This document shows, piece after piece, positions 2,878 to 54,077 of a DNA stretch of 64,000 bases. Made by a program: the position numbers and the translations under genes. The notes under the pieces are model-generated. The model did not search any database, was not told the origin of the DNA, and saw nothing but the letters and a program-made list of their open reading frames with translations. The DNA lies in contig NIVC01000202.1 in the NCBI GenBank assembly GCA_002269645.1, forward strand, positions 124,001 through 188,000, written 5' to 3'. The stretch's first letter is position 1. Each line of letters opens with the position of its first letter. Source of the stretch: Macrostomum lignano (lineage: Eukaryota).

Positions 2878-4332
<1,455 letters not shown>

Positions 4333-7779: not shown

Positions 7780-9258
7780 CTATTCGATGAAATCTTCGGC
7801 CGGAAGCTGTCTGGGCGGCAGCACCAGCGGGTCGAGCTGGTCTGACGGCTGACTCTGATGATGGGGAAGCCGCTCCAGCTGCACCTGATGCTGGACAAGA
7901 TGCGGATGCAGATTCTGCTGCTGATGCAGCCGCAACTCGCCAACAGCGTCGTGCCGAGCCGAGGACGGATGACCGCGAGAGTACAGCGAGCACAGCTGCG
8001 CCATCTCCCGCTGCTGCCTGCCCTCCTCCTGGCAATTGCAACGGAGAATTAGCCGAAAGTACTTCTTAAACTTTGAACTGATCAGCGCTAGGCAGAGCGG
8101 ATTGATGGCGCTGTTAGCGTAGCCCAGCAGCAGGCAGATGGGCAGCACGGTGGTCACCACCACGTTCACCTCCTGGTCTTCGTCAGCCGCTGTGCTGCCG
8201 CCCATCATCGGCAGAGACGTTGTAGTCCCAGCGGTGGTGGAGGCAGCTGGAGTCGCGGTGGTCAAAGCATCGGGCAGGGCGAAGCCGCGCAAATCGATGA
8301 AGATCGTGACCGCGTGGTAGGGCAGCCAGCAGACAGCGAAGGCCAGCAGCAGGGCGATCATGATTTTGCTGACCTTCACCCGGCCCTGGCTGAGCGCCCG
8401 CAGCCCGCTCTGCTGGGCCTCGCTGGCGGCCTGCTGGCGCGCAAATTTTACCGTTGAGATGAGTGTCCGGCCCAGCATGGAGTAGAACACGGACATGGCG
8501 ATCAGGGGGATCAGGTATAGAGCCGCGAACAGGAATAGAGTGTAGGCGGTCTTGCGAGCTGTGGAGTCCTGCCAGTCCTCGACGCAGAAGTACACGGAGG
8601 ACTTCCAGTGGAAGTCGTGCCTACGCAGCTTGTAAGCAGCCGGGATGGGACTGCAGAGCAGCACGGAGGCCAGCCAGATGCCCGCCACCCAGAGGCTCAT
8701 CGCCCGGTTGCTCATCCGCTCCTTGGCCGTCATCGGGTATCGAATGATAACGTAGCGCTTGATCGACATCGAGGCCAGAGAAGCGATCGACACCGAGACG
8801 GAGACGCCCTGCAGGAATGGCGACAGTTTGCACAGGGCCACGCCGAATATCCAGCGAGTGCTGAGCACATTGTAGGCCGTGATGGGCAGGCAGATGAAGA
8901 AGATTAGCAGGTCGCTGATCGCCAGATTCAACAGGAAGATGTTGGTTCGCGAGCGCATAGTTGGGAAGATGGCAATGCTGAGGATTACCAGCGCGTTGCC
9001 AGTCACACCGACTAGGAAAAGGAGGCTGAAAGCAGCCACCATGGGGATCTTGTAGTGCATGCTCTGGCCCTGTAGGTAGGACTCAAAGAGCTCGCGGCAG
9101 TGCTCGGCCGTCTCCGGGGTCATTTCCTCAGAGGACATGCATCGGTTGAGTTCGCTGAGCTGCTGCAGGCGCTGCTGCCAAAGTTGCTGCAAACCGGACC
9201 CGTTGAAGTCCAGCTGGAGGCTGCCGAAGTCAAGTGGACCGGCAGGCGTGGTGGCCAT
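7780..9258 (-). CDS. Intronless class A (rhodopsin-like) GPCR, neuropeptide-receptor type (orexin/allatotropin or NPFF/SIFamide-like), 492 aa
   Basis: Seven hydrophobic segments with GN (TM1), NLAISD (TM2), CKLSPFLQGVSVSVS (TM3), W4.50, ECL2 Cys, YLIPL (TM5), CWLP (TM6) and NSAINP (TM7). The subfamily call comes from recalled motif similarity only. Confidence 0.93.
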   Translation of the reverse strand: MATTPAGPLDFGSLQLDFNGSGLQQLWQQRLQQLSELNRCMSSEEMTPETAEHCRELFESYLQGQSMHYKIPMVAAFSLLFLVGVTGNALVILSIAIFPTMRSRTNIFLLNLAISDLLIFFICLPITAYNVLSTRWIFGVALCKLSPFLQGVSVSVSIASLASMSIKRYVIIRYPMTAKERMSNRAMSLWVAGIWLASVLLCSPIPAAYKLRRHDFHWKSSVYFCVEDWQDSTARKTAYTLFLFAALYLIPLIAMSVFYSMLGRTLISTVKFARQQAASEAQQSGLRALSQGRVKVSKIMIALLLAFAVCWLPYHAVTIFIDLRGFALPDALTTATPAASTTAGTTTSLPMMGGSTAADEDQEVNVVVTTVLPICLLLGYANSAINPLCLALISSKFKKYFRLILRCNCQEEGRQQREMAQLCSLYSRGHPSSARHDAVGELRLHQQQNLHPHLVQHQVQLERLPHHQSQPSDQLDPLVLPPRQLPAEDFIE

Positions 9259-18700: not shown

Positions 18701-19445
18701 TCCTTGAAAATCGTGCAAGGCCAGATCGGGCTGGGCTTCTAAAAATACATCAGCAAGATTGAAATGCTTCAGTTTTGTTTTAAACACATTATAAAGATTG
18801 CTTCATATTCTGGAGTTTCATTCAAGGTGTCAATCAATAAAAACCGCATATTGTCATTTTAGTGCTAAAAAACGAAAACAGACGTCCAGCGATGACTAGG
18901 CGACGTTAATCCGACCTACGCGTATTTAACACCCATCTATCTTAGAGAACATCACGCGGTGCTTGCATGATTTTTTAAATTTTGTTTTCCATATAATACA
19001 TTATTATGAGCTCAGCTCACAATTTTTTTTTCAACGCGACATCAACTGCTGCAGCTTAATTAGAATGCAGGTGAGCCAGCCGAGTCACCTTTGCCAACCG
19101 CTCGGGAAGAAAGAAAGAGAAAGAAAGAATGCAGCATTATCACAAGGCGAGTGCGCGCTGCAGATTCAAGGCTGGACAATCGCTGCTTAAAAGATAGCTG
19201 GGCCCGTTCATGCGTGGCATTGTGCCAGCAGCCTCCCCCCACTGTGCTATGCTCTGCCTGCCAGACCCTCATGCTTCTCTCTGCCGGGGGATGGGGGGGG
19301 GGTAAACAACAAGCAACTTTCCTGCACTTGTACTGCTTAAATAACCAAACGGCCAGGGCTTTTTTCGAAAATGATAGAAGATTGAAGCCACCATCTAAAG
19401 TTTTCAAGCCTTAGCACCTCAGGGCAACTGCTGAAACTCAGAGCC

Positions 19446-19658
19446 ATGCAGGCAAGCAGCAAGCCGACAAACCTGGCCCAGACTTATAGGGCCACGCACC
19501 AGACAAGGGCACCGCCTGCCGAAGAGAAAAGCGACATCGCCGACAATCCGTTCCTGAACGCCTTCATTGCCATTGACGAGGACGGCAGCGAGACCATCAC
19601 GGTTGATGAGCTGAGGGCCTACATGAAGAAGAACAACTTTCAGGAGTCCTTTGTCAAG
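19446..19658 (+). CDS. Tegument allergen-like (TAL; 2 EF-hands + dynein light chain domain) protein, exon 1 of 3
   Basis: EF-hand loop DEDGSETITVDE. Donor AAG|GTTCGG at 19659, phase 0. Confidence 0.85.
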
Positions 19659-19830
19659 GTTCGGTTGGCGACTAACCGGGCTGGGCTGCTCCAGATGGGA
19701 ATTTAGAAACTAAGAAGGAGAGGCCAGAGCTCTAAGACAGACAGCCATTCCGTGCGCGGCCCCACATTCATTGGGGGGCTGGTGTGCACGTAAAATAAAA
19801 TTGGCCCGAGGGGATTGTCATGCCATAAAG

Positions 19831-20181
19831 GGGGGCCGTAGCCCAGCGGTAGCGCAGCTGCTCTGGTGTGCCAGCGGCTCAGGCTCGATTCCAAGTGCAG
19901 TCACATTAATTTGAGGCTAAATTGGAATCTCGGCTTGGCTCTGCTCGTGCAATTAACGCCACTGAGAGCCAACCCCCCAGGGCGCAGTGAAGTGTACATG
20001 CCTAACGATAAATAAAGTTAGGGCCGCTGTACACTCCTGTGTGAGTGTGCGCCTGTGCGTATGACTGCGTACGCATCCGCGCGCTTGTGTGCCTGCTCAG
20101 GGGAGTCGGCGGAATGGGCAGTAATGCCTCTCGCCGGTTGTGCGACAATGTCGCTTGAAGTGCGCCAGAGTGCACACAGCC
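19831..20181 (+). mobile_element. tRNA-derived SINE, family A, copy 1 (TAL intron 1)
   Basis: A-box TAGCCCAGCGG (19839-19849), B-box GGCTCGATTCC (19882-19892). Body repeated at 21267-21616 and 35145-35305. Confidence 0.85.
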
Positions 20182-20204
20182 CCCGGCCTCTAATAAAAAA
20201 ATTG

Positions 20205-20400
20205 TCATGTCATTCACAGCCATGAGGGCCAACCCCCAAGGCACAGAGAGTGTACATGCCTGACGATTAGAAAGTCAGGGCCGCTGTACACCCTGGGTGA
20301 GCTGTGTATGAGTGATTTGCCTGCGTGCAGTATTGGCGCGCTTCAGTCAGTGCTGATGGCGGGACGATGTCGCTGAGGGCATTGCGCCAGGGTGCCATAT
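20205..20400 (+). mobile_element. Diverged partial copy of the SINE family A body
   Basis: GGCCAACCCCCAAGG..GTGTACATGCCTGACGAT..GGGCCGCTGTACAC resembles 19965-20040. Confidence 0.6.
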
Positions 20401-20479
20401 TACAGACGGACACTAAGATACCAAGCGATAAAAAGCTACAGACAGACGATTCACTGCAACAACTCAAATTTCCGCACAG

Positions 20480-20568
20480 AAATGGCTCACCATGTTCGAC
20501 CTAGACGGAGACGGAGTCATCAGCTTTGACGAGTTCTGCGAAGTCCTCGGCCTGCAGACGAAAAGCGC
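20480..20568 (+). CDS. TAL protein, exon 2 of 3 (second EF-hand)
   Basis: Acceptor CGCACAG|AAA. Encodes KWLTMFDLDGDGVISFDEFCEVLG. Donor GC|GTAAG, phase 2. Confidence 0.88.
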
Positions 20569-20646
20569 GTAAGCTGAACTGTTTAATCCCGCTAGACCGT
20601 GGCATTCAAAAGTTAAAATAGATCAAATGCAAAATCGGGTTTTCAG

Positions 20647-20974
20647 ACGCAACTACCGACGTCAGAGCCTCATCCGCTCCGGCCTGCCAAGCGACGTCCG
20701 AATCATCCTGGTCCACATGAGCGAGTGGACCCAGTACCAGGTCGTGCAAATCGTCCGCAACGCCTGCTCGAACTTCAACGACGAGCGCGACATCGCTATG
20801 AACGTGAAGCAGCGTCTTGACCGCGAGTTCGGCCCGATGTGGCACATCATGATAGTGCAGGGCAAGTACTACGCCAGCTACAGTCACGAGCCGGAGATGT
20901 GCATCTTCTTCAAGTTCGACTCTCGGGTGTTCTTAATCTGGAAGACGCCGGAGGAAGGACCGCGAAAGCAATGA
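20647..20974 (+). CDS. TAL protein, exon 3 of 3 (dynein light chain-like domain); spliced CDS 630 nt = 209 aa
   Basis: Acceptor TTTTCAG|A keeps the frame. IAMNVKQRLDREFGPMWHIMIVQGKYYASYSHE...FLIWKTP is the DLC-type signature. Confidence 0.9.
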
Positions 20975-21266: not shown

Positions 21267-21616
21267 GGGCTGTGTCCCTGGCGCACTTTAAGCGACATTA
21301 TCGCACAACCGGCGAGAGGCATTGCTGCCCATTCCGCCGACTCCCCTGAGCAGGCACACAAGCGCGCGGATACGTACGCAGTCATACGCACAGGCACACA
21401 CTCACACAGGAGTGTACAGCGGCCCTAACTTTATTTATCGTTAGGCATGTACACTTCACTGTGTCTTGAGGGTTGAGGGCCCTCAATGGCGTTAATTGCA
21501 CGAGCAGAGCCAAGCCGAGATTCCAATTTAGTCCCAAATTAATGTGACTGCACTTGGAATCGAGCCTGGGCCGCTGGTACATCAGAGCGCCGTGCTGGAC
21601 CACTGGGCTACGGCCC
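21267..21616 (-). mobile_element. tRNA-derived SINE, family A, copy 2 (inverted relative to copy 1)
   Basis: Reverse complement matches 19831-20181 along its whole length. Confidence 0.85.
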
Positions 21617-22571
21617 TCTTGAAGCACAGTATTGCAATTCGCAGTAATTCACAATGAACTCTGCTACCCAGAACTTACAGACAACAATGTCCCCCGACTG
21701 AGATTTCTTGACTCAGATCACGCAATGTACTCGTGTCTGCTCTCTCCTTTCGTGTGAAGTTGCCGAGCTTAGCCCAGCAGGATGTGGGAATAATGGAATT
21801 CTCATGCAGCACTCATTGCCCCTGACCTCCGCGACAAGTCACCAGAACGAAGACTCTACGATATTTAATAGCTGAGCTAATTATTAACTAAACGTACATC
21901 GTGCATTTAGCACAGTCAACTTCATCTGGCTATTGAATGGAAAATTCTGCAGGAAGTTCCACCTGGAGTGAGAAGCCTCTGCCGAACAAGATGTCAAGGG
22001 AAAGGCGAATTTTTTTGAGAATCATGTGACTCAGAATGAATATTGGCTTCCGAATGGGATTTTGGGAAAATAACTCCCATATATGGCTGCTGTTTTTCGT
22101 TGCAGTTCGAGTAGCTACTGTTTTTTCATGCGAAAAATTTTGTTGGGAAAAACATTGCTAAATCAAAATGAAGGTTGAGCAGCTTCGGTGTGGCTCAGTG
22201 TAGATAATTAGTTCATTAAATAAAATCTAAGTCAATTTGTAAGCAAAACGCATGCCAATATAAAGTTTGGGAAAAACTTTTTTCTAATAAAGTCATTTTA
22301 TTTTCATAGTTATCAAAGTTGAAAAAGTATAGTTATTAAAGCAACAAAACATGCAGAGGCCTACAAAACCTTGCCAATAGAAATACATTTTAACGATGGG
22401 CAGTTCCTTCGATTTCTCGCTCTTTCTATTGAAGTTAACAGATCCTGCCACTATTTTAGAGCTCTTTAGTAAAAAAGTTCATTATGTACTTCCACTCTTC
22501 GACCATTTATGTCAGACAGTTAATTGTTACATTTAATTGGGGTGCCAGAAGGACTAGCAAAACGGGCTAAG

Positions 22572-26268: not shown

Positions 26269-26453
26269 TCGGGAAGCCTTACAAACATTAATGAAATATA
26301 ATAGTTTAACTAAGTTAGAATATAATCTTCCATTTCTAAACAATGGGATTAGTACTGAAGCACTTTTTATCTGCAATCCATTAGCTGATTGCGACTCTTT
26401 CTTGATAATGCGATACCCATCAGTCAGAGAGTCGGTCTCAATACTGCTCTCAC

Positions 26454-27130
26454 CGAGGTCGCACGAGTACAAGTCGTTCAGTGCGCCGGACCGGCCGAGG
26501 CCGCCGAACACAAGCAATCGCTGGCGCCACAAGACAGCGCCGTGACCAGCCCTGGCGCACGGCGCGCCGGTGTTGTTATCGCCACTGGCAACAGTTGACC
26601 AGACTCGATTGTGCAAATCGAACCGGTGCAGCGAGCTGTAGAATTCGCCTCTGTGCATGCCACCGTGCACGAACAGCGCCGAGTCCGTGACCGCCACCGC
26701 GTGACCCTGGCGCGGCGTCGGAGGCGACTCCGACACGGAGGAGGCTGAGTCGGCTACTTCAAGGGTCTCCCAGCGACGCTCGGCCAGGTCCAGCCGGTGG
26801 ACGCGGCTGTCCGGCACGGCGTCGGCGCCGGCCAGGCCACCGGAGAACACGTACAGGTGGTCGCCGCGGCAGGCGGCCTCCCCGGCATGGTAAGTCCGGG
26901 GACTCGGCGGCTCGCCGGCTAGCAGCGGGCTGAGCGCTTTCCACTTGCCCGGCGTGCCGTCCGACCGGACGTCGACGTACACAACGTCGGAACGGTTCGA
27001 GTCGGTGCCGGCGCCGGCGAAGGCGAAGACGCGACGAGGACGCGATTCTGTCTGGAAGGCGGCGTGCTCGTAGCGACCAAGCTGGGCCGGGCCGTCCACC
27101 CGGTCCCAGGACAGAGTGCTGAGACAGAGC
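26454..27130 (-). CDS. RABEPK: RABEPK exon 2 of 4 (kelch repeats)
   Basis: RYEHAAF, PPSPRTYHA, LYVFSGG, PTPRQGH, LFVHGG and LLVFGG kelch motifs. Acceptor CCCCAG, donor G|GTGAGA. Confidence 0.92.
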
Positions 27131-27712: not shown

Positions 27713-28324
27713 GACAAGGTGCGCTTTAATTTTGGATTAGAAATTTTTAGGCCACACTTTTCGGCTGTGTAGGGCCGTTTGAAGCTGTGGTAAAAGTGAC
27801 TTGGCTTTGCAGAGCTCTCTTCTCTTTGTCTCCAGTGCCTCGCAATGCCAACCTCACAGGGCCCCCGACTAAGCCTCGAGTTGATGGAGTCTGGGCCGTG
27901 AGTTCCAGTGCCGAATGGGATGGGACTTAGACAAAGGCTCTATTTTTCTTTGTCGTCATAGATCATTTACCGCAAGACTGAGCCAGTCATGGTCAAAAGA
28001 GCCCTGAGCTTACAGTATTTACCAGTCAGATTGTGTGAGCCGAAGCCGACAGTCTACATTGTTTGCTTGTTTACCCCGTAGTGGATTCAGTTGAGCACAA
28101 TGAAATAATCAGCAATGCAGCAATGCATGCATGATACAGGATCACTGAACTATGGCAAGCCGGCTCACTCGGCTGACTGGGAGAAAATGGCTCGTCTGAC
28201 TAAACATCACTAAGGGTTGGGGATTTGGGACTACTGTTTGTGCTGTTGACTGCTTTCAATAGACCTATGAAGCTTGAGTAATAAAGAGAGAAGAGGAGAA
28301 CAGAAATCAAACTTGAGCAGGCGG

Positions 28325-28326
28325 GC

Positions 28327-28411
<85 letters not shown>

Positions 28412-28414
28412 CTA

Positions 28415-28455
<41 letters not shown>

Positions 28456-28458
28456 CTA

Positions 28459-28499
<41 letters not shown>

Positions 28500-28522
28500 C
28501 TAAGACAGACAGACAGACACTA

Positions 28523-28583
<61 letters not shown>

Positions 28584-28586
28584 CTA

Positions 28587-28665
<79 letters not shown>

Positions 28666-28668
28666 TAG
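28325..28668. repeat. (GACA)n with ACACTAAGACA interruptions, RABEPK intron 1
   Basis: Direct reading. Confidence 0.95.
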
Positions 28669-28710
28669 ACCAGAAAACCATGCCAGCAAGCGCCTTCACG
28701 GATGTCTTAC

Positions 28711-28895
28711 CTGTAGTGCTCAGCAAAGGTGCCGTCCGGATTAGCGCCGCCGACTATCAGCACCTGGCCGGCTTGCCGGACAAAAGTAGCCGTGTGTCCG
28801 ACTCGCATTGATGGCGAATCGCCAATGCCAGACAGTACATACCACATGCCCTCCTTGGGCAGTGAGTTCAGTTCCAGGATGGGGTTCAGTTCCAT
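28711..28895 (-). CDS. RABEPK: RABEPK exon 1 of 4; spliced CDS 1197 nt = 398 aa
   Basis: MELNPILE...WYVLSGIGDSPSMRVGHTA...LIVGGANP aligns with the recalled human N-terminus. Donor AG|GTAAG, phase 2. Confidence 0.9.
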
Positions 28896-28943
28896 GACGA
28901 TGAGCTTGTGACTATCTGAGACGGAGATAAAAAAAATGGCAAA

Positions 28944-29294
28944 TCACATCAGGACGCAAACTTTGGATTTATCAGCTGGCGCAGTGGACTCTGGATCGCT
29001 GGGGCGCCGTTTGTTGAGCTTTGAAACCGCGGCCGCCGATGCGATCACTGGCAGGTTGCCAAAGCTTGAATAGTGCTGGATGCGTGACGAACTGCCCAGC
29101 TGTAGGTAGCTCTTCGAGGCTGATAGCCCGATGTATTTGGCGCTGGTTGACAGACTTTGAAAGACGGTCTGCGCCGTGTCCTTGTACCGCTCTCTGATTT
29201 CCTGTTGAGTTTCCTCAGGCAAGTCTGGCAGCACTTCGCCCTGCTCTGTCAAGCTGTCTGGCGAAGCTGGCCTAATCCGCCCCTTCTTGCTCAT
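28944..29294 (-). CDS. Orphan 116-aa protein ending in KSKVCVLM (CaaX prenylation motif)
   Basis: GC-rich non-repetitive ORF beside an AT-rich region, preceded by acceptor CTACAG. No family recognised. Confidence 0.55.
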   Translation of the reverse strand: MSKKGRIRPASPDSLTEQGEVLPDLPEETQQEIRERYKDTAQTVFQSLSTSAKYIGLSASKSYLQLGSSSRIQHYSSFGNLPVIASAAAVSKLNKRRPSDPESTAPADKSKVCVLM

Positions 29295-29575
29295 TCGGCA
29301 TGGTCTGTAGGTTCAGATGTTCAATATGCTAGAGTTGTGTATTGGTAGATACATAGCTAAATGATTTTTTGCTAATATAGCATAATTAATGGTCCTAAGT
29401 TATAATTACAAATAATTGCTTCCAATGATACAAATATCAAACGAAAATAAAATTTAATAGGTTTTTATGCAAATTAAAAATGCATGCAAAAGTAAAAGCT
29501 CTAACATGTCATATTTAAAAACTAGAATCCAGGCTATCACCTATCATTGAAGTATATATAATACATTTAGTATAT

Positions 29576-34200: not shown

Positions 34201-35144
34201 AGCTGGCATATATATATATACACTTATTCTAGACCTAGAAGAGGCTAAACCATATTATTACTGTTTGTATAAGCACAAAAACATCACAATTAAATTAAAT
34301 AAAAATAATTTAAAAATAAATTAATTAGAAAGTTCATATATTATAAAGTTTATAGTATATAGTTAAATATTTTTTAAAATTTGTTGTATATACATTAAGG
34401 ATAATAGCTTTATCAAGAAATGTTTTCAATTTTTATAAATTAGTATAAACATTTATATCTTTTTTATAATAAGCATATATATTACTTTGGCTAATCTGTT
34501 TTTTTACTGAAGTTAAAGTTAAACCAATGTTAAAATGTACATAGTGGCACTGGGATGGCTAACCAAAGGGTGGTAGGTAAAAGAGTCATCATGCTAAATC
34601 ATGCCATTTCCTTATGTTATGTACATTAGCTATGTACATTTTAATGTTCTAGTAAAAATCAATCAGCAAGAAGCTAAGAGATTTCTTAGCCTAAGAGATA
34701 AGAGAAAGCTGCAAGCACCTAGTACACTTCCTATACTAGTGTATTTTGCCAGGTATATTTGGTGCTAATTAAAAAAAATTGAGAAACTTGTGGTACTTAT
34801 ATCATGATCATAACTATGGATTGTAGATAAGGGTAGATACTGAGTTTTTTTGAATAGACAGAAATAAGTTTAAGTATTAATATTTACAGTCACATCTATA
34901 TTTATTTCATATTTATAGAATTACTTAAGGCTATATTAAAACTTAGCCTCTTAGTGATAAAAAGCAAAAATCGCTGTACAAGAGGTGTTAAGTATTTATA
35001 ACACAAAAAACCTTTTAGAATTGATGATTTTTTACTATGATTTGATACCATTGGCAGATTTTATGTGAGAGTTTGCATCTAAATTAGTTTCCATATTTAA
35101 ATGGACCATGTTTAGATGTATAAGTAGGGCATCCTTTAAAGGGT

Positions 35145-35305
35145 TGGGGGTTGGTGCCTTGGGGGTTGGCCCTCAAGGGCATTAACTGCACAAGCAGAGC
35201 CAAGCTGAGATTCCAATTTAGCCTCAAATTAATGCGACTGCACTTGGAGCCTGGGCCGCTGGCACATCGGAGCGCCACGCTTGACCACTGGGCTACGCCC
35301 CCCCC
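35145..35305 (-). mobile_element. SINE family A, 5-prime part, copy 3, upstream of SDE2
   Basis: Reverse complement matches 19831-19985 including the A-box. The B-box region is partly deleted. Confidence 0.8.
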
Positions 35306-35458
35306 TCACAACCAATATAACAATCCACTAGAGTCAAAATAAGGTAACCAGAACGTAGACCGCGTAGTCACACTAAATAGATGGATTATCCTATAAAGAT
35401 TCAACCATAGCGTCAACTTATTACAAACAAAATTCATGCAAATTCACCTCCAGTAACC

Positions 35459-36712
35459 ATGGCAACCACCAACGATGATTTGCTAAACTCCGCCAACTGC
35501 TACTACACCTGCAATGGAAAAATTTTGCACTCGCCCGAGGAGCTGGCCGCCGCTCGCGCCTCCGGCTTGCCTCTGCGCGCCTGGCCGCGCCTCCCAGGCG
35601 GCAAAGGCGGCTTCGGCTCGCTGCTCCGCTCCATCGGCTCCCAGATTGATAAAACCACTAATAGGGAGATGTGCCGCGACCTCAGCGGCAGGCGTATGCG
35701 CGACGTGAATAATCAGAAGCGCCTGGCTGAATGGGCCTCCGGCGCCAGCGCCCGGGCCGCCGAACGGCAGAAGCGCCGAGAGGAGAAGCGCCAGCGCCGA
35801 CGCCAGCTGCTGGCCTCAGCCGACGGACCAGCCGGTCACGTGATGGAGGACGGCAGCTACCTGGTTGAGAAGGAGCGCATAGTAGATTCGGTTTTCACCG
35901 CGGTCAAGGAAGTTCTGACGGCGCCGAAAAAACGACCGGCGGTTGCGTCGACCAGCGCCGATGCGCCATCGACGTCGGCCCCTGCCGGCCCGTCAAAGCC
36001 GCCGAAGCTGGCCAAGAAATGGTTGGACGCCGATTTAGCCGAACTCGAAGCCGAGGGCAGCAGCGGCGCCAGCAGCAGTAGCAGCGACAGCGACACCGAC
36101 GACCGCGACTCGCCGTCGTCTTCGACTGGCAGCGCGGCGGACGAGTCAAGAAACGGCGATGATGCGAAGCCAGCAACGGAGGAGGCGCCGAAAGCGAACA
36201 GAAGCCAGACGGAACAGCCGCCGCCACAATCTGCAGAGAACAACGTCAATACCAAGACACCAGCCGTCGTCGATACCAAGACACCAGCCGTCGTCGATAC
36301 CAAGGCACCAGCCGTGGTCGATACCAAGGCACCAGCCGTCGTCGATACCAAGGCACCAGCCGTCGTCGATACCAAGGCACCAGCCGTGGTCGATACCAAG
36401 GCACCAGCCGTCGTCGATACCAAGGCACCAGCCGTGGTCGATACCAAGGCACCAGCCGTCGTCGATACCAAGACACCAGCCGTCGTCGATACCAAGGCAC
36501 CAGCCGTCGTCGAACTAATCGACCTATCGGCCATAGACAGTCTGGAGTCGGCCGAAGCCCTAGGCTTGGATTCGTTGAAAGATCAACTGCGACTGCGAGG
36601 ATTGAAATGCGGCGGCAGCCTGCGAGATCGGGCTCAGCGTCTGCTGGCTGTGCGCGGCCTGCAGCCGGGCGATTATCCGGCCGCTCTGCTGGCCAAACCG
36701 GCTAAGAAGTGA
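35459..36712 (+). CDS. SDE2: SDE2 (ubiquitin-fold-activated splicing / replication-stress factor), intronless, 417 aa
   Basis: [17 protein letters not shown]...[17 protein letters not shown] signature and C-terminal [28 protein letters not shown] domain. Confidence 0.95.
36248..36511 (+). repeat. Coding 24-bp minisatellite, 11 x (D/N)TK(A/T)PAVV, inside SDE2
   Basis: 11 in-frame units counted. Confidence 0.95.
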
Positions 36713-37422: not shown

Positions 37423-39402
37423 ATGTTTCTGCCGCCCAGCCAGTGCGGCCAGGGCCAGTCGGCCCTAATCGAGAAGGCCCGTCGACAGCGGGACGAGCGT
37501 CAAGGCGAGCGGCGTCGCGAACTGTCGGCCCTGCGCATACAGGCCTGGTATCGAGGCCAGCTCGCTCGCATCCGCCTGCGCTGTCAACTGCGCGACGAGT
37601 TCCGCGCCAGCCTGTCAGCCGCTGCGCCAGCTGGCGGCGGTTCAATCAGCGCCGAGGAGCTGCTGTCTGCGGCGGCGAAACTGCTGTACAGATTCGATCC
37701 GATCCGAGATCTGGCCGATTTCGAGCTGCTAGCCCGCCGTCTGGTCTCGAGCTCAGAGGCCACCGCTTCGCGCGCCGCCTACCCGGCGCTGCTATTAAAA
37801 AAAGCCCGCGCCGCGGCCTGCGCCGCCCAGCTTAGCAAACTGATTGCCGCCATCTCGGCCTGTCTGGCCGCACTGCAGCCGGACACTAATGCCGGACACT
37901 TGCGCACGGCCAGCGTCTGTTTGAGCGCACTGTTGGCTCTGTCCACTCCCGAACGGTGGGGCTTCCTGTCCGCCCTGTCTAATCGAGAGGCCTACCTCTC
38001 CGGTCTGAGGCCCCTGCTGGCTCGGGCCTTCTCCGGACCCAGCGGCGCCTCCGCATTGCTGGCCTCCATTGGCCGCTTCCTCTGGCTGGGCCTGGCCAGG
38101 CAGAAATCTCTCCTGTCCCCTCTGCTGCTCGGCGCCCTGCTCACCGCGTCTCTGCGCGCCGCCGATTTAGGCGGCTGGACAGCCGGCCTGATTGACGACT
38201 TCCTTCGACATCTGCTGTCCGTGCCCGGGCTGGTTGCTCACGCGGCCGCGGCTGGCGAGGCCGCTCTGCCCGGCCTGCTGGAAGCCGATGCTGCCGGTCG
38301 GCTTGTCGACCGGCTGGCCGAATCCGACGCCAGGCCGCTTTGCAGCGAGCAGTCGCCGTTGGACGCCGGTCGGCTGCTGTGCACCCTGGCTAATCTGGTG
38401 CAGCTGGCCCAGCTGGATCTGCGAGTTTTAGCCGACCGGCTGCCCGCATTCTGTCTGGCCGCGTCCGCTTTGCTGAGACGCCTTCGCCAGTTAGTTAGCA
38501 ATGGCCGGGCCGCCTCCAGCACTAGCTGGCATCCAGTGCTTGGCTGGTTCTCTCATCCCTGCGATCCCGGCCTGCAAGAGTCTATGCCAACCGTTGCTAA
38601 GCAACTGCAATTATTATGCGGAGCTAAAATGGTCCGGCTCTTATTTGCCGATTTACTCGGCTACGAAGTGTTCACTTTAAGATTTCACGACGAGTTGGCT
38701 TCCGGCGGAAGTGGCAGCGGCGGCGGCTCCTCGGGCAGCAGTGGGATCAGCATCAAGCGGCCGACATTCCGCCTGTTGAAAGGCTCGTCTTCTTCGGCGT
38801 CGAAAACGTCGTCAACTTTGCCTCTGCCCGCGGCGGCTTCGGCCTCGTCATCGGCGTCGGCGTCTGGGGCGCCGGCGCCCGTTCGCGAGCTGGCCGGGCT
38901 GCGGCTGGCGGACACCGGCGACTGCGGCGGCGGCGGCAGTGGCAAGCGTCAACAACAGCAGCAGCAGCAGCGCTGTTGGCTCCGACAGTCAGCCCAGACA
39001 GCCTGCCAGCTCTATCTGCAAGCCAGCAGGGCCCTGTCGCAGATGCGTAACGACATACTCGGCGGACTGTGGATCAGCGACCTGCCCAGGCGGCTGTGGC
39101 GCCTTGTCCAGTCATCTGGCAGCGCCGCCGATTGGTCCTCCGTGGCCAATGCGGCTGCCAAAACTGCTTCGCAAAATAATCATTGGGAAGACTCGTCGGC
39201 TAGCCCGCTGCACCTGTTGACCCTATTCTGCGAGAGCTCGGCCGCTCTGCTGACGGTGCTGGACGATGTTGAACTGTTTGAACAGGAGCGCTGCCTGCAG
39301 CTGACAGAGCTGGCGTCTTTGGCCGCCTTCCTGAATCGGTTTGTCTATTCGCACGTGTGCGCCGTCGGACCGGATGCTGCCAATGCTGGGCCCGCCTTTC
39401 AG
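37423..39402 (+). CDS. UBE3B: HECT E3 ubiquitin ligase UBE3B, exon 1 of 5 (IQ motif)
   Basis: MF...IEKARRQRDER...IQAWYRG N-terminus. Donor CAG|GTTTGT, phase 0. Confidence 0.9.
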
Positions 39403-39436
39403 GTTTGTTGCCCGAGTAAATGTAAGGTTGTGCACG

Positions 39437-40556
39437 ATGGTCACTCTTCTGCCACTTGACTGTCGCTATGGATGGTCACTTCTGCCACTTGGCTGTCGCT
39501 ATGGATGGTCACTTCTGCCACTTGGCTGTCGCTATGGATGGTCACTTCTGCCACTTGGCTGTCGCTATGGATGGTCACTTCTGCCACTTGGCTGTCGCTA
39601 TGGATGGTCACTTCTGCCACTTGGCTGTCGCTATGGATGGTCACTCTTCTGCCACTTGACTGTCGCTATGGATGGTCACTCTCCTGCCACTTGACTGTCG
39701 CTATGGATGGTCACTCTTCTGCCACTTGACTGTCGCTATGGATGGTCACCCTTCTGTCACTTGACTGTCGCTATGGATGGTCACTCTCCTGCCGCTTGAC
39801 TGTCGCTATGGATGGTCACTCTCCTGCCACTTGACTGTCGCTATGGATGGTCACTCTTCTGCCACTTGACTGTCGCTATGGATGGTCACCCTTCTGTCAC
39901 TTGACTGTCGCTATGGATGGTCACTCTCCTGCCGCTTGACTGTCGCTATGGATGGTCACTCTTCTGCCACTTGACTGTCGCTATGGATGGTCACTCTCCT
40001 GCCACTTGACTGTCGCTATGGATGGTCACTCTTCTGCCACTTGACTGTCGCTATGGATGGTCACTCTTCTGCCACTTGACTGTCGCTATGGATGGTCACT
40101 CTTCTGCCACTTGACTGTCGCTATGGATGGTCACTCTTCTGCCACTTGACTGTCGCTATGGATGGTCACTCTTCTGCCACTTGACAGTCGCTATGGATGG
40201 TCACTCTTCTGCCACTTGACTGTCGCTATGGATGGTCACTCTCCTGCCACTTGACTGTCGCTATGGATGGTCACTCTCCTGCCACTTGACTGTCGCTATG
40301 GATGGTCACTCTTCTGCCACTTGGCTGTCGCTATGGATGGTCACTCTTCTGCCACTTGGCTGTCGCTATGGATGGTCACTCTTCTGCCACTTGACAGTCG
40401 CTATGGATGGTCACTCTCCTGCCACTTGGCTGTCGCTATGGATGGTCACTCCTCTGCCACTTGGCTGTCGCTATGGATGGTCACTCCTCTGCCACTTGGC
40501 TGTCGCTATGGATGGTCACTCCTCTGCCACTTGGCTGTCGCTATGGATGGTCACTC
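39437..40556. repeat. 33/35-bp minisatellite (GATGGTCACTCTTCTGCCACTTGACTGTCGCTATG), UBE3B intron 1
   Basis: About 32 copies. Confidence 0.95.
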
Positions 40557-40683
40557 CAAAAGGCCACTGAGGGGAGTCAGTGGTTGACTGCTATACTGCG
40601 GTCTCAATAGTGGCTCTAAGTGATTGCACGCAGGGATTTATAACATGCCCCGATTTTCTGCACGCCCCTCCCCCACTCAACAG

Positions 40684-41097
40684 GCGGCCCTCCGCCTTCT
40701 GGCCGTGCTGCACACGAAGGACACCAGGCATCCGTTCTGTCCGCCAGCGGTTTGGCTGGTGCCCGGCCTGAAGCCGCACGCCTTCCTAGCCGATTTAGAG
40801 CGCGAACGGCCGGCTGCTCAGTTCCTATTGCGCGCTTGTCCTCACGTGCTACCATTGCGCGAGCGTATCGGCTTGTTTCGCCGGCTAGTCCGATCCGACA
40901 AAAATGCTTTAGGCCTGCTTGCTTTGGAGACTCCGCCGTCTACGCTGATTGTTGTTCGGCGAAGCCAGCTGGTTGAGGACGGCTATCGACAGCTGGCGGC
41001 GCTGCCCGTGGCCAAATTGAAGGGCACCGTCCGGGTGCGGTTTGTCAATGATCTGGGACTGGACGAGGCCGGCATTGATCAGGATGGAGTCTTCAAG
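40684..41097 (+). CDS. UBE3B: UBE3B exon 2 of 5
   Basis: Acceptor CAACAG|GCG. PHVLPLRERI...EDGY...GLDEAGIDQDGVFK. Donor AAG|GTGCGC. Confidence 0.9.
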
Positions 41098-41109
41098 GTG
41101 CGCTTGCTC

Positions 41110-41648
41110 TTTGGTTGCTGGTCTTTTGGTAGGGTTTCTGGTGTTTTGGTAGGGTTTCTGGTTGTTCTGTTGGGTTTCTGGTGGTTCTGTTGGGTTTCTG
41201 GTGATTCTGTTGGGTTTCTGATGCTTCTGTTGGGTTTCTGATGCTTCTGTTGGGTTTTTTATGGTTCTGTTGGGTTTCTGCTGGTTGTGTTGGGTTTCTG
41301 ATGCTTCTGTTGGGTTTCTGGTGGTTCTGTTGGGTTTCTGCTGGTTGTGTTGGGTTTCTGATGCTTCTGTTGGGTTTCTGATGCTTCTGTTGGGTTTTTT
41401 ATGGTTCTGTTGGGTTTCTGGTGGTTCTGTTGGGTTTCTGCTGGTTGTGTTGGGTTTCTGCTGGTTGTGTTGGGTTTCTGCTGGTTGTGTTGGGTTTCTG
41501 GTGGTTCTGTTGGGTTTCTGGTGGTTCTGTTGGGTTTCTGATAGTTCTGTTGGGTTTCTGCTGGTTGTGTTGGGTTTCTGCTGGTTGTGTTGGGTTTCTG
41601 ATGCTTTTGTTGGGTTTCTGCTGGTTCTGTTGGGTTTCTGCTGGTTTT
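41110..41648. repeat. 20-bp minisatellite (GTTGGGTTTCTGCTGGTTGT), UBE3B intron 2
   Basis: Direct reading. Confidence 0.94.
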
Positions 41649-41688
41649 AAGTCGTAAGTTACCAATATCTTGCATGATCCATCGGCAG

Positions 41689-42057
41689 GAATTCCTGGAG
41701 GAGATCCTCCGCCGCGTGCTGGACCCCAGCCTGAACCTGTTCAAAGCCACTGAGGACCAGCGCCTGTACCCTAGCCCGACTTCTTGCGTGCAGGAGAATC
41801 ACCTGCTTCTATTCGAATTCGTTGGCCGACTGTTGGGCAAAGCTGTGTACGAAGGCATTGTTGTTGACGTTGCATTCGCCACGTTCTTCCTCACCCAGAT
41901 GCTTGACAGGCAGCGCTCCTCATTCTATAGCTTTGTTGACGAGCTGGCCAGCTTAGACGCTATGCTGTACAAGAATCTCACCTTTATTAAGCACTATGAG
42001 GGCGACCTGTCCGAGCTGGAGCTCACCTTCAGTTACGATGAGGACGTCATGGGTCAG
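41689..42057 (+). CDS. UBE3B: UBE3B exon 3 of 5 (HECT N-lobe)
   Basis: EFL...LYPSPTS...[20 protein letters not shown]. Donor CAG|GTAATC. Confidence 0.93.
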
Positions 42058-42063
42058 GTAATC

Positions 42064-43646
<1,583 letters not shown>

Positions 43647-43662
43647 CTCTTCGCTTCCGCAG

Positions 43663-43916
43663 GTAGTAACGCACGACCTGGTGCCTGGCGGCCGATTTGT
43701 TGCCCTCACCAACGAGAACCGGTTCAGCTACGTGCACCTGATGGCCAACCTGCGCATGCACACTCAGATTCGCCAACAAGTGGCCGCTTTCTTGCGGGGC
43801 TTCCGTCAGCTTGTGAGCGCTGATTGGCTGAGAATGTTTAGCCCGCCCGAGCTGCAGTGTCTCATCGCTGGGGAGGCTACCGATATAGACCTGGACGATC
43901 TCAAACAGCACGTCAG
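43663..43916 (+). CDS. UBE3B: UBE3B exon 4 of 5
   Basis: Acceptor CCGCAG|GTA. VVTHDLVPGG...MFSPPELQCLIAG. Donor AG|GTAAG, phase 2. Confidence 0.93.
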
Positions 43917-44009
43917 GTAAGACAAAGGGCCTTTTGAGTTACACGGGAGTGAATCTCGGTTTGGGTTAATGTAAACCTCCGTGTATTATTGTGGGAATAT
44001 CATATCTTA

Positions 44010-44320
44010 GTGTCAGAATCTCAGGATTTAGGTGTGAGAATCCCAGGACTTAAATGTAAGAATCTCAAGACTTAAATGTGAGAATCTCAGGTCTCGTGTG
44101 AGAATCTCAAGACTTGGGTGCAAGAATCCCTTCTAGAGCCTATTCTGATTACCTAGAAATGTGATATTGCTTTTTCGCCTAACATAAGTCCTGAGATTCC
44201 CACACCTAATTCCTGAGATTCCCACACCTAAGACCTGAGATTCCCACACCCCAAGTCCTGAGATTCCCACACCTAAGACCTGAGATTCCCACACCCCAAG
44301 TCCTGAGATTCTCACACCTA
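44010..44320. repeat. Inverted pair of ~21-bp arrays (GAGAATCTCAGGAC / GTCCTGAGATTCCCACAC), UBE3B intron 4
   Basis: 44010-44130 resembles the reverse complement of 44185-44320. Confidence 0.75.
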
Positions 44321-44612
44321 GGGGCTGTAGCCTAGTGGTTAGAGCGTCGGACTCATGACTTGAAGGTCGGGGGTTCGATTCCCGATCCCACTAAAACAAT
44401 TTGTATCCTTGAGCAAGACACTTGACTCTGCATTGCTTCAGTTCACCCAGCTGTAAAATGGGTGCCAGCATTAGCTGGGGTAATTGAGGGGGTGTGTGGC
44501 GACCCCCCAGTGCTTGGACTGAACAGCCGTACGCAGCCTTCAGATGCGCCGCGTAATAGCTGCGGCTGAGCTGTCGGTTGCACATCTGGCCCAATCGGGG
44601 CAGGTGTAATCA
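44321..44612 (+). mobile_element. tRNA-derived SINE, family B, with a CORE/MIR-like conserved central domain
   Basis: A-box TAGCCTAGTGG, B-box GGTTCGATTCC, then CCTTGAGCAAGACACTTGAC...TCAGTTCACCCAGCTGTAAAATGGG (44407-44462). Confidence 0.8.
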
Positions 44613-44730
44613 ATTAATCTTTTTTTATTAATATTTTTTTACCCTATTAGATAAAAAACGATAGCCATCCTCTATCTGCCTACTACAAGTAGCAAAACCA
44701 GCAATTTCAAACTGAATGATAATTTGTCAG

Positions 44731-45115
44731 GTACTACGGCGGCTTTCACAGCGGCCACCGCGTCATCCAATGGCTCTGGGAGGTGCTGGAGCGCGACTTC
44801 AGCCCAGCTGAGCGAGCCCTATTCCTCAAATTTGTCACTTCCTGTTCTCGACCACCGTTGCTGGGATTTGCTCATCTCCAGCCTCCGCTCTCCATCCGTT
44901 GCGTCGAGGTGGCCGAAGATCAGGACACCGGCGACACGCTGGGCACGGTGCTCAAAGGCTTCTTCCGAATCCGGTCCGGCCGAGACGCCCAACGACTGCC
45001 CACTTCGTCCACCTGCTTCAACTTGCTGAAGCTGCCCAACTACGCCAAGAAGGCCACGCTGAGGGACAAGCTGAGGTACGCGATCTCCAGCCACTCAGGG
45101 TTCGAGCTCAGCTGA
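44731..45115 (+). CDS. UBE3B: UBE3B exon 5 of 5 (HECT C-lobe); spliced CDS 3402 nt = 1133 aa
   Basis: [18 protein letters not shown]...DQDTGDTLG...[17 protein letters not shown]...GFELS with the catalytic Cys. Confidence 0.95.
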
Positions 45116-45868: not shown

Positions 45869-47292
45869 CCACTTTAATCGCTTTGGTCCTTTGGTGGACC
45901 TCTTTTATTTGTTAACATCGCTCATTATTTGAAATGCCTGTTCTCCAATTGCATTCTCCACTTAGTGTCCACTCACTGTCACTAGTGAGTAGTGTCCAAG
46001 TTTTTTTCTGTGAAAATACTAAATCAAAAAGCTAGCTTCTCTAATGTCTAAACAGTATATATTTAAGCAGATTGTTTGCGACTTTGAAGATATTTTCACA
46101 AGTACTGTCTTGTTGAGTTAATGTATATATAGTATATACGCTTCGCAATATGTACACAATCGAGTAGATTGTAATGCACAGTCTTTGTTGTTTGCTGTCT
46201 AAGTATATTAGCACATAGCATATAATTGCTTACAGTAACGTCATTATAAACTTACTATGCGTTACGGAGCCTGATTAAACAGCTTCGGCTCGACTCGGGA
46301 CAAATTATTTAAAATTGCGTCTTATTCTTCTTGCTTGTCCACGCTAAAAGTTGCTTTCAAAATGCAGTTATTTTTAAAATCATTAAGATTTCTGTTCTTA
46401 TGCTGCACTTTACTACATATGTCTGTTATTAATCGAATAATCTGAGAAAATATATATACATAACTGAAATTGTAGAGAGAGACCGATGCAGACTCTAATC
46501 CAAATTATCCAAATTAAATTCCCGTTTGTCTCCATAATTTAAATGGCTTTTTTAGGTATGTGGCTATAGTATATGCATAAATAAGTTTTATAGCATTTTG
46601 TCTTTATTTTTACTGAGTAAGTAGGCAGTAGCGAAAGTTGAAGCCGCTTTTTTTATACACCTGACACCTCTTGTCACTCTTTTTCAATGCGAGAAAAGTT
46701 AAATACACAACATATCGGCGATGCTTTACTGTTTTTCCTTCGTCGTTTTCTGATCTAGGAAGTTCATATATAGAAAAGGCACGTATTAAAATTCAGCACG
46801 GATAATATCATCAAAAATATTTTTCTGTCTAAAAATATTGTTCCCCTCTCCCCTCCGGGATCCAGCTATCGGATTCCTGATTTCCCGTCTTATATCTGGT
46901 GCAAACTCGAGGACAAAATCGGAATCAAGAATTTCGAAACGATGCGGCTTGTTTAAAAATAGCTTTCGTTTCTCGCCTCTTCAAGTCGCCTACGCATCTC
47001 CCATATTCCGCAAGGCCTTCTCTTTTGTTCGGCTGCTGGATCGACTCTTCCTCTCTTCCCTCCGCCTCCTCAGGCCAGCCCGCCTACGCATTTTCAAGTC
47101 GCGCGTGCTCTCTCGGCTGGATGTAGGGGAGGGGGGCTAGGCTTTGGAGTTGATTTTTTACCCTTCCGTTTTTGCTTTGCTCTGCTGAACAGGAATATTA
47201 AAGTGTTATCTTGCCGTGCTCTTCAGTTTACAATGGAATGTCTCACTGTCTCTTATTTATCCTCTTCTCCGGGTCTTGTGTCTGCTACTCCA

Positions 47293-47998
<706 letters not shown>

Positions 47999-50005: not shown

Positions 50006-50129
50006 GAAAAGAAAATACAGACAATAGCACTAAGACCAGACAGACTCCAGTCCATGATAATCAGGCTGGAATGAGGCTTGCGAGTAATGAAACTGGGTGC
50101 CGTCAGCATACTGTCTGAACATTTTCCAG

Positions 50130-50821
50130 ACAAAAGGCTTAACAGCAATCCGCGCCACTGCGGCGCGCTGCCTTTTAGCGCGCGTCCACCCGGCTGCGCT
50201 GGCGGCGCCGTCGCTGCTCGAAGTCAGCGGTTGGCGGCCCCGGCGGCTTCGCCAAGCCGCGTACTTTCTGCGCAGCGGCGCCGGCTGCGGCGCCCTGCTA
50301 GTGGAGCTGGAGCATTGGTCCGAGGTTCGCGACTACCTGGTCGGCGCCGGGACTGCAGCCGCACGAAGCGGCAGATTCTTCCTACCGTCGCCGGTGCTCG
50401 GCGACCCGGCCTGGGCCTTGGCGGCGGCGGCTGAATCGTCGGAGTGCCGACGCCAGCGCCTGAGCCCTGGCGTGTTCCGCCTAGCCGGGCTCAGCCTGGC
50501 GACCAGCCCGACAAATTTTACAGCTGCCGGTTTGTCCGGCCAGGCCATGCGGCTGTGTCTGTCGGCTCTGCTGCCGGAGCCTGAGCTGCTGGCGCGTCAT
50601 CTGGTGGCCGTCCAGTGCGACCGGCTGGCGGCGGCGGTAGGGCTCGACCGGCGGGTGGTCATTGTCGGCGGCTCCCGCTGCGGCTTCGGCGTCAGGGGCG
50701 CGCCGCTCAGCCTGCTGATGCTGCCGAGGCAACGGCAGTGCCGGGGTGGCAGCGGCGGCGGCGGTCGGTCGAAGGAACCCGCGGCGGTTGACGCGGCCGC
50801 GTTTAACACTAGGGAGCCTCG
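50130..50821 (+). CDS. Mitochondrial poly(A) polymerase/TUTase-like (Pol-beta nucleotidyltransferase fold) protein, first identified exon; catalytic DxD absent
   Basis: Acceptor TTTTCCAG, phase 0. RHLVAVQCDRLAAAV...VGGSRCGFGVRGAPLSLLM resembles recalled MTPAP RYLTCSLIEDMAAAY...FGSSVNTFGKLGCDLDMFL. Donor CG|GTGAG, phase 2. Confidence 0.65.
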
Positions 50822-50835
50822 GTGAGGATTTCGCT

Positions 50836-54000: not shown

Positions 54001-54077
54001 AATCACCCTGATCCCACCCAACCTTATTCTCCCACATGCACTCAACATTCCACCTAATCTCCCAAATCTCTCTGCAG

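What the first reader, a model, noticed from the sequence alone, without database searches (positions are those of the whole stretch)
28896..29310. Orphan CaaX-box microprotein packed 48 nt upstream of RABEPK: candidate bicistronic unit
Seen: a 116-aa GC-rich ORF ending ...ADKSKVCVLM-stop. Its stop (28944) lies 28 nt before a U-rich acceptor (AG at 28917-28916) and 48 nt before the RABEPK ATG, with no AATAAA between. The nearby donors I checked give no in-frame fusion, and the RABEPK ATG already matches the recalled human N-terminus. Known: basic residues followed by C-a-a-M is a Ras-like farnesylation signal; RABEPK (p40) is a Rab9 effector in endosome-to-TGN transport; Macrostomum uses SL trans-splicing and has operons. 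Inference: a lipid-anchored orphan protein co-transcribed with a membrane-traffic effector, in an operon with almost no intercistronic space, possibly a functional partner or a uORF-type regulator.
Basis: partly seen in the sequence, partly recalled or inferred. Interest (0 to 1): 0.7.

Follow-up and report, generated by a model that had tools for sequence, protein, structure and literature searches.

The report
Orphan CaaX ORF upstream of RABEPK
A 116-codon reading frame ending in a farnesylation-type CVLM box does sit 48 bases before a flatworm RABEPK gene and looks moderately gene-like, but it has no relatives anywhere, and neither its expression nor any link to RABEPK could be tested here.

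Summary
The minus-strand ORF runs 29294..28944 (116 aa, ends KSKVCVLM-TGA). A pyrimidine-rich CAG acceptor has its AG at 28917-28916, and the RABEPK ATG is at 28895. RABEPK is real (about 41% identity to reptile orthologues) and its ATG aligns with their N-termini. An EF-hand/dynein-light-chain gene elsewhere in the window marks the source as a flatworm; the species is not verified.

Evidence that the ORF is a separate cistron:
- It fills a sharp GC-rich block (0.56 against 0.25-0.33 upstream).
- GC3 is highest in its own frame, and its codon usage is the best of six frames (z = 4.3 against open shuffles).
- A CTACAG spliced-leader-type acceptor motif sits at its 5' edge.
- It contains no GTRAG donor.
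- No other exon-like segment lies in the 6 kb upstream.

Evidence against:
- There is no homologue in two very large protein libraries, Pfam or PDB.
- Its codon score is below every control exon chunk.
- An out-of-frame ATG with better context lies 7 nt upstream.
- Only 28 nt are available for a 3' UTR.
- The predicted protein is mostly disordered.

The databases lack this organism, so conservation, transcription, translation and prenylation remain untested. The best reading is a taxon-restricted upstream cistron of a two-gene flatworm operon (confidence about 0.45). That would be ordinary for such genomes. The proposed functional link to RABEPK/Rab9 is speculation.

The parts
29305..29310 (-). 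CTACAG acceptor-like motif (fits YTNCAG) at the AT-rich to GC-rich boundary. The putative exon or SL-acceptor start is at 29304.
   Evidence: The motif definition comes from PMC8629364. Only 4.8% of all ATGs in the window have such a motif within 20 nt upstream.
29272..29301 (-). Out-of-frame 9-codon uORF (ATG CCG AAT GAG CAA GAA GGG GCG GAT TAG). It overlaps the ORF116 start and has A at -3.
   Evidence: ATG list. The context was read from the sequence.
28944..29294 (-). ORF116: 116 codons plus TGA. It is an orphan with one predicted helix (residues 27-54) and is otherwise disordered.
28947..28958 (-). Codons for the C-terminal Cys-Val-Leu-Met (CaaX box, X = Met).
   Evidence: Background rate.
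28968..28973 (-). GATAAA, the only poly(A)-signal-like hexamer near the 3' end of ORF116. It lies inside the coding sequence.
28916..28943 (-). Pyrimidine tract plus CAG acceptor directly after the ORF116 stop. It is the candidate SL trans-splice acceptor of RABEPK and a possible U-rich downstream element for 3' end formation.
   Evidence: No GTRAG donor lies between 29312 and 28944. RABEPK exon 2 uses a similar GTCTCAG-type acceptor region.
28711..28895 (-). RABEPK exon 1 (ATG 28895; donor CAG|GTAAGA at 28710).
26454..27130 (-). RABEPK exon 2 (kelch repeats). The acceptor is at about 27131, or possibly 27119. The donor is CTCG|GTGAGA at 26453.

Best explanation
ORF116 is most likely a taxon-restricted, protein-coding upstream cistron of a two-gene flatworm transcription unit (operon) whose second gene is RABEPK.

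Inferred mechanism:
1. Transcription starts in the AT-rich region above 29312.
2. [quoted passage not shown]
3. RABEPK mRNA is made by spliced-leader trans-splicing at the pyrimidine-rich CAG acceptor (exon start 28915). This leaves a 20-nt leader before its ATG.
4. That acceptor lies only 28 nt after the ORF116 stop, so the two processing events must share the U-rich tract. Either ORF116 mRNA ends within those 28 nt, or it survives only on molecules that are not trans-spliced there. This resembles operons without intercistronic sequence.
5. If translated, the mostly disordered 116-aa product ends in CVLM. By established CaaX rules (X = Met) this is a farnesyltransferase substrate motif, so it would be membrane-associated.

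Shown here: the sequence anatomy, the coding-like statistics, RABEPK identity and flatworm origin. Inferred: transcription, both trans-splicing events, translation and prenylation.
For: - Composition: a sharp jump from 0.25-0.33 GC upstream to 0.56 exactly at the ORF's open frame. Outrons of other genes in the window are AT-rich.
- GC3 is 0.655 in the ORF frame against 0.48-0.53 at positions 1 and 2. This matches RABEPK exon 1, at 0.66.
- Codon log-odds, trained on five homology-supported genes of the window: the ORF frame is the best of six (0.01 against -0.23 or lower). z = 4.3 against 500 stop-free shuffles.
- Among all non-repetitive open segments of at least 80 aa, ORF116 groups with known exons rather than with intergenic ORFs.
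- It is the only exon-like minus-strand segment in 28.9-35.4 kb.
- A YTNCAG motif lies 3-10 nt before its ATGs, as at the GPCR and SDE2 starts. The window-wide background is 4.8%.
- No GTRAG donor lies upstream of the RABEPK acceptor within the block. This is the condition for trans-splicing stated in PMC8629364.
- Flatworm origin.
- In M. lignano, 15% of genes are in operons, mostly of two genes, and 24% of trans-spliced genes lack human homology.
- Operons whose poly(A) site abuts the next acceptor are known (PMC12582326).
Against: - No homologue at E <= 0.001 except a spurious bacterial repeat protein. No Pfam or PDB match.
- The codon score (0.01) is below all 18 control chunks (minimum 0.067, mean 0.23).
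- The ATG at 29301 is 7 nt upstream, out of frame and in better context. The ORF's own ATG has C at -3 and A at +4.
- At most 28 nt are available for a 3' UTR plus cleavage site, and only a GATAAA is nearby.
- The AF2 single-sequence model is poor (mean pLDDT 53, one helix).
- ORF length and the CaaX end were the selection criteria, and each is near chance expectation for a 64-kb scan.
- No transcript, ribosome or cross-species data could be reached.
Confidence: 0.45

Rival explanations
1. The block is a non-coding 5' leader or outron of RABEPK. It is transcribed, then discarded when the spliced leader is added at 28915 or kept as a long 5' UTR. The open frame and the CVLM ending are chance.
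For: - No homologue anywhere.
- The codon score is below all control exons.
- About 1% of shuffles are open per frame, and one chance CaaX-like end per window is expected.
- An overlapping uATG has better context.
- There is almost no room for a 3' UTR.
- ATGs are few in the 400 nt before the RABEPK ATG: 29301, 29294 and 28949 only.
Against: - Frame-specific GC3 and codon bias.
- A GC-rich block unlike the outrons of other genes in the window.
- The ORF spans the block exactly, from one acceptor-like site to the next.
Confidence: 0.3
2. ORF116 is a long upstream ORF translated from a RABEPK mRNA isoform that is not trans-spliced at 28915. It acts in cis by lowering RABEPK translation, and the peptide itself has no function.
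For: - Same strand, 48 nt upstream, with no processing signal proven between the two.
- The only ATG between the ORF start and the RABEPK ATG is the ORF's own last codon.
Against: - By established knowledge of scanning, reinitiation after a 116-codon ORF is inefficient, so such an isoform would make little RABEPK.
- A strong acceptor with no cis donor predicts removal of the ORF from RABEPK mRNA.
- Codon bias suggests selection on the peptide.
Confidence: 0.12
3. ORF116 is an exon of a larger gene. It could be an alternative N-terminal exon of RABEPK, or the last exon of an upstream minus-strand gene.
For: - The frame is open 18 nt above the ATG, and an acceptor-like CAG lies at 29305.
- Two GT sites would be in frame with RABEPK.
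Against: - Those GT sites do not fit GTRAG.
- The RABEPK ATG aligns with residue 8 of orthologues, so no extension is expected.
- No exon-like minus-strand segment lies in the next 6 kb, and beyond that are plus-strand SDE2 and UBE3B.
Confidence: 0.05
4. The block is a decaying remnant of a former gene or a captured fragment. It keeps residual codon bias but no longer has a function.
For: An intermediate codon score and no relatives.
Against: The frame is intact over the whole block. It is unique in the window and is not a repeat.
Confidence: 0.05

Closest known systems
[quoted passage not shown]
   Same: - Two same-strand genes at very short distance.
- The downstream gene is preceded by a pyrimidine-rich CAG acceptor with no cis donor.
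- The upstream gene has a YTNCAG-type acceptor.
- Two-gene operons predominate, and a quarter of trans-spliced genes are not conserved.
   Different: - The modal intergenic distance in M. lignano is about 100 bp. In S. mansoni intercistronic distances are at least 5 bp, with a median of 99.
- Here the stop codon itself is only 28 nt from the acceptor.
- The species and SL usage are unverified.
Operons without intercistronic sequence (C. elegans SL1-type; Ciona intestinalis), as summarised in PMC12582326
   Same: The 3' end of the upstream cistron would have to abut or overlap the downstream trans-splice acceptor.
   Different: - In those systems the upstream gene still has a normal 3' UTR with a poly(A) signal.
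- Here at most 28 nt follow the stop, with only a GATAAA inside the coding sequence.
- This type has not been demonstrated in flatworms.
Small CaaX-prenylated proteins (K-Ras4B hypervariable tail ...KSKTKCVIM, G-gamma subunits, MIEN1). Named from general knowledge, not searched here.
   Same: Small size and a C-terminal Cys-aliphatic-aliphatic-Met/Leu box. The KSKVCVLM ending resembles the K-Ras4B ending.
   Different: - No sequence or fold relationship was detected.
- There is no GTPase or other domain.
- The second membrane signal is weak: two Lys and no palmitoylatable Cys.
Long upstream ORFs in 5' leaders
   Same: [quoted passage not shown]
   Different: It is 116 codons long with frame-specific codon bias, and a strong acceptor lies between it and the main ATG.

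Membership tests
CaaX prenylation substrates | Cys at position -4 from the C-terminus | tested here: met
   TGC at 28958-28956, followed by GTC CTG ATG TGA
CaaX prenylation substrates | Aliphatic a1 and a2, with an X residue that selects the enzyme (Met, Ser, Gln, Ala or Cys for farnesyltransferase) | tested here: met
   Val, Leu, Met. The rule comes from established knowledge. No predictor such as PrePS was available.
CaaX prenylation substrates | The protein is actually made and modified | not testable with these tools
   No transcript, ribosome or proteome data. The exact sequence is not on record.
CaaX prenylation substrates | A second membrane signal (polybasic stretch or nearby palmitoylated Cys), as in Ras proteins | tested here: inconclusive
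   Only K109 and K111 lie near the Cys. KRR sits 20-22 residues before the Cys, with acidic residues in between, and there is no other Cys.
Spliced-leader operon (flatworm type) | Adjacent genes on the same strand at short distance | tested here: met
   48 nt from stop to ATG, and 28 nt from stop to the AG
Spliced-leader operon (flatworm type) | The downstream gene has a 3' splice acceptor with no cis donor upstream | tested here: met
   Pyrimidine tract plus CAG. No GTRAG lies in 29312-28944. Only four scattered GTRAG sites lie in the 6 kb further upstream, none preceded by exon-like sequence.
Spliced-leader operon (flatworm type) | Spliced leader found on the downstream mRNA, and poly(A) on the upstream mRNA | not testable with these tools
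   No RNA data. There is no SL RNA gene in the window.
Spliced-leader operon (flatworm type) | The upstream cistron is a real gene | tested here: inconclusive
   Codon and GC3 signals are positive but weaker than in control exons. There are no homologues.
Spliced-leader operon (flatworm type) | The organism uses SL trans-splicing | tested here: inconclusive
   - Flatworm marker gene: EF-hand + DLC, with best PDB hits to fluke CaBPs.
- YTNCAG lies within 20 nt of the ATG at 2 of 4 known gene starts, against a 4.8% background.
- The species is not identified.
RABEPK (Rab9 effector with kelch motifs), downstream gene | Kelch-repeat protein orthologous to RABEPK, with a matching N-terminus | tested here: met
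   41% identity over 98% of exon 2 to reptile RABEPK, E = 5.5e-36. tblastn places the ATG at residue 8 of P0001. Exon 1 gives weak kelch Pfam hits.

The most novel reading that the evidence does not exclude
A flatworm-specific, farnesylated, intrinsically disordered microprotein is made from the same primary transcript as RABEPK. Its processing would be mutually exclusive with RABEPK's, because trans-splicing 28 nt after its stop destroys its mRNA. The locus would then switch between a lipid-anchored peptide and the Rab9 effector, and the two might act on the same endosomal membranes.
Probability: 0.07. Interest if true: 0.55.

Novelty: new member of a known kind. Interest (0 to 1): 0.3.

Why it matters
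If real, ORF116 would add one taxon-restricted small gene to the many non-conserved genes found in flatworm operons. It would also be a clean example of an operon with essentially no 3' UTR or intercistronic space, a type not yet documented in flatworms. That would make it a convenient test case for how 3'-end formation and trans-splicing compete on one U-rich tract. A CaaX-tagged microprotein next to a Rab9 effector suggests a link but proves nothing. If it is not real, the case shows that a CaaX-ended ORF of this length is about what one 64-kb GC-patchy window yields by chance.

Tried and rejected
- Homology searches all failed. These were the word-indexed search of 5.8 billion proteins and an exhaustive phmmer against 1.84 billion representatives. 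The single phmmer hit, P0005, is a bacterial five-repeat surface protein and was rejected. Pfam, PDB sequences and a JGI metagenome scan also gave nothing.
- Exact-sequence look-ups of ORF116, the GPCR and SDE2 found nothing. The best UBE3B relative is only 65% identical. The collections therefore lack this organism, and absence of hits says nothing about close relatives.
- The M. lignano spliced-leader sequence is not in the window, and Rfam found no SL RNA.
- In-frame fusion of the ORF to RABEPK was rejected for lack of GTRAG donors.
- The idea that ORF116 is the last exon of an upstream gene was rejected, because no exon-like segment lies in the 6 kb upstream.
- A repeat or transposon origin was rejected, because the block is unique in the window.
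- Single-sequence AlphaFold gave pLDDT 53. That is too poor for a fold search, so none was run.
- The bacterial promoter/terminator scan is irrelevant to a eukaryote.

Full report
**Observation**

Reading the minus strand and listing ORFs confirm the layout to the base.
- An ATG at 29294 opens a 116-codon frame: MSKKGRIRPASPDSLTEQGEVLPDLPEETQQEIRERYKDTAQTVFQSLSTSAKYIGLSASKSYLQLGSSSRIQHYSSFGNLPVIASAAAVSKLNKRRPSDPESTAPADKSKVCVLM.
- The frame ends with TGA at 28946-28944.
- The next 28 nt are TTTGCCATTTTTTTTATCTCCGTCTCAG. They are 85% pyrimidine before the AG at 28917-28916.
- Twenty nucleotides later comes the ATG at 28895.
- There is no AATAAA in between.

It has A at -3 and opens a 9-codon uORF that overlaps the ORF start.

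**The downstream gene**

- The exon-2 translation finds reptile 'rab9 effector protein with kelch motifs' at 41% identity over 98% of the query, E = 5.5e-36.
- tblastn of those proteins against the window recovers four exons: 28895-28711, about 27130-26454, about 26012-25833 and about 23682-23614.
- The ATG at 28895 aligns with residue 8 of the orthologue, so no N-terminal extension is expected.
- Both checked introns start with GTRAG: CAG|GTAAGA and CTCG|GTGAGA.

**Organism**

No protein of this species or a near relative is in the searched collections.
- RABEPK tops out at 41% identity and the conserved UBE3B HECT region at 65%.
- Exact look-ups of ORF116, the GPCR and SDE2 fail.
- The M. 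lignano spliced-leader sequence is not in the window.
- The gene at 19386-20971 (+) combines an EF-hand with a dynein-light-chain domain. Its best solved relatives are CaBP-type calcium-binding proteins and a 20.8-kDa tegumental protein (5fwz, 9voa, 5x2d), which I recall as fluke proteins, ahead of canonical LC8.

By established knowledge, that architecture is a platyhelminth family. The window is therefore from a flatworm. 'Macrostomum' is plausible but unverified.

**Is ORF116 coding?**

*Evidence for*
1. GC content jumps from 0.25-0.33 upstream to 0.56 at the point where the frame opens. The regions upstream of the acceptors of other genes in the window are AT-rich.
2. GC3 is 0.655 in the ORF frame against 0.53 and 0.48 at positions 1 and 2. 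RABEPK exon 1 has 0.66, and well-supported genes here have GC3 of 0.70-0.79.
3. I trained a codon model on five homology-supported genes of the window.
   - The ORF frame is the best of six: 0.01 bits per codon against -0.23 or lower.
   - It is 4.3 SD above 500 shuffles that were required to be stop-free.
   - In a scan of all non-repetitive open segments of at least 80 aa, it falls with known exons rather than with intergenic ORFs.
4. It is the only exon-like minus-strand segment between 28.9 and 35.4 kb.
5. CTACAG|ACC ATG at 29310-29305 fits the [T/C]TNCAG motif reported at M. lignano trans-splice acceptors.
   - The same motif lies 16 and 5 nt before the GPCR and SDE2 ATGs.
   - Only 4.8% of all ATGs in the window have it within 20 nt.

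*Evidence against*
- There are no relatives in 5.8 billion clustered proteins.
- There are none in an exhaustive phmmer of 1.84 billion representatives. The single hit is a bacterial repeat protein, scored up by five repeats.
- Pfam, PDB and a metagenome scan gave no match.
- The codon score is below all 18 control chunks (minimum 0.067, mean 0.23).
- The better-context ATG lies 7 nt upstream in another frame.
- The single-sequence AlphaFold model is poor: mean pLDDT 53, with one helix at residues 27-54.
About 1% of shuffles are open per frame. One other unique C-aliphatic-aliphatic-X end occurs among about 470 open segments.

**Architecture**

- None of the 13 GT dinucleotides in the ORF fits GTRAG, so cis-splicing from the ORF to the 28916 acceptor is unlikely.
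- An acceptor without an upstream donor is the stated requirement for spliced-leader addition.
- In M. lignano, 30% of genes are trans-spliced and 15% lie in operons, 75% of which have two genes. The modal repeat-adjusted spacing is about 100 bp, and 24% of trans-spliced genes lack human homology.
- Operons whose poly(A) site abuts the next acceptor are known from Ciona and from C. elegans SL1-type operons. In S. mansoni all examined pairs keep at least 5 bp.
- Here at most 28 nt follow the stop, and the only signal-like hexamer is GATAAA at 28973-28968.
- Lack of AATAAA means little, because four other genes in the window also lack it within 400 nt of their stops.

**Verdict**

I rate the explanations as follows.

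| Explanation | Confidence |
|---|---|
| Taxon-restricted upstream cistron of a two-gene SL-type operon, with the U-rich tract shared between 3'-end formation of ORF116 and trans-splicing of RABEPK | 0.45 |
| Non-coding leader or outron, with the ORF and CaaX end arising by chance | 0.30 |
| Cis-acting long uORF | 0.12 |
| Exon of a larger gene | 0.05 |
| Decaying remnant of a former gene | 0.05 |

Farnesylation follows from CaaX rules only if the protein is made. The Ras-like polybasic claim is overstated, since there are only two Lys near the Cys. Nothing supports a functional link with RABEPK/Rab9.

If real, this is an ordinary kind of object for a flatworm genome with one unusual feature, the near-absence of a 3' UTR. 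Deciding the question needs SL and 3'-end read mapping and a comparison with congeners. Neither was possible with the collections available.

Noticed in passing
window 19386-20971 (+): A two-exon gene encoding an EF-hand plus a dynein-light-chain domain. Its best solved relatives are CaBP-type calcium-binding proteins and a 20.8-kDa tegumental protein, which I recall as fluke proteins. This is a flatworm-specific family and serves as a taxonomic marker for the window.
   Followed up: yes
window 35459-36712 (+) and 37423-45115 (+): SDE2 (Pfam SDE2 and SDE2_2C domains) is followed on the same strand by UBE3B. The gap of about 700 nt is filled with tandem repeats, and a CAG acceptor lies 8 nt before the UBE3B ATG. 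This is a second operon-like pair.
   Followed up: partly
window 7780-9258 (-): A single-exon rhodopsin-family GPCR (7tm_1, E = 1.5e-52) with a TTGCAG acceptor-type motif 16 nt before its ATG.
   Followed up: partly
window 44321-44390 (+): A borderline Rfam tRNA match (30.3 bits against a gathering score of 29) inside a UBE3B intron. ARAGORN finds no tRNA there, so it is probably a tRNA-derived repeat or pseudogene.
   Followed up: partly
window 28230-28690, 3034-4345, 47290-47730: Long (CTGT)n microsatellites with occasional CTTAGTGT interruptions. One fills much of RABEPK intron 1. They generate many spurious long ORFs in all frames.
   Followed up: no
window 54058-54855 (+) and 50091-50822 (+): GC3-rich open segments (GC3 0.76-0.78). 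Codon usage is clearly gene-like for the first and only weakly so for the second. Neither has a Pfam hit, so they are further candidate orphan or poorly conserved coding exons.
   Followed up: no
window 59864-64000: A GC-rich (0.67) tandem satellite that is open in all three minus-strand frames for more than 1300 codons. Its plus-strand ORFs repeatedly end in ...GCCAC, which accounts for nearly all CaaX-like ORF ends in the window.
   Followed up: no
window 35087-35339, 21385-21648, 19904-20017: A dispersed repeat whose translations share ...INCTSRAK(L/P)RFQFSLKLM... and ...NLGLNWNLGLALLVQL... It lies near the 5' side of SDE2 and around the EF-hand/DLC gene.
   Followed up: no
window: stops of GPCR (7780), UBE3B (45115), SDE2 (36712), EF-hand/DLC gene (20974): None of these genes has a canonical AATAAA within 400 nt downstream of its stop. 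Only ATTAAA, TATAAA or AATATA variants occur. Poly(A) signals in this genome appear non-canonical or distant.
   Followed up: partly
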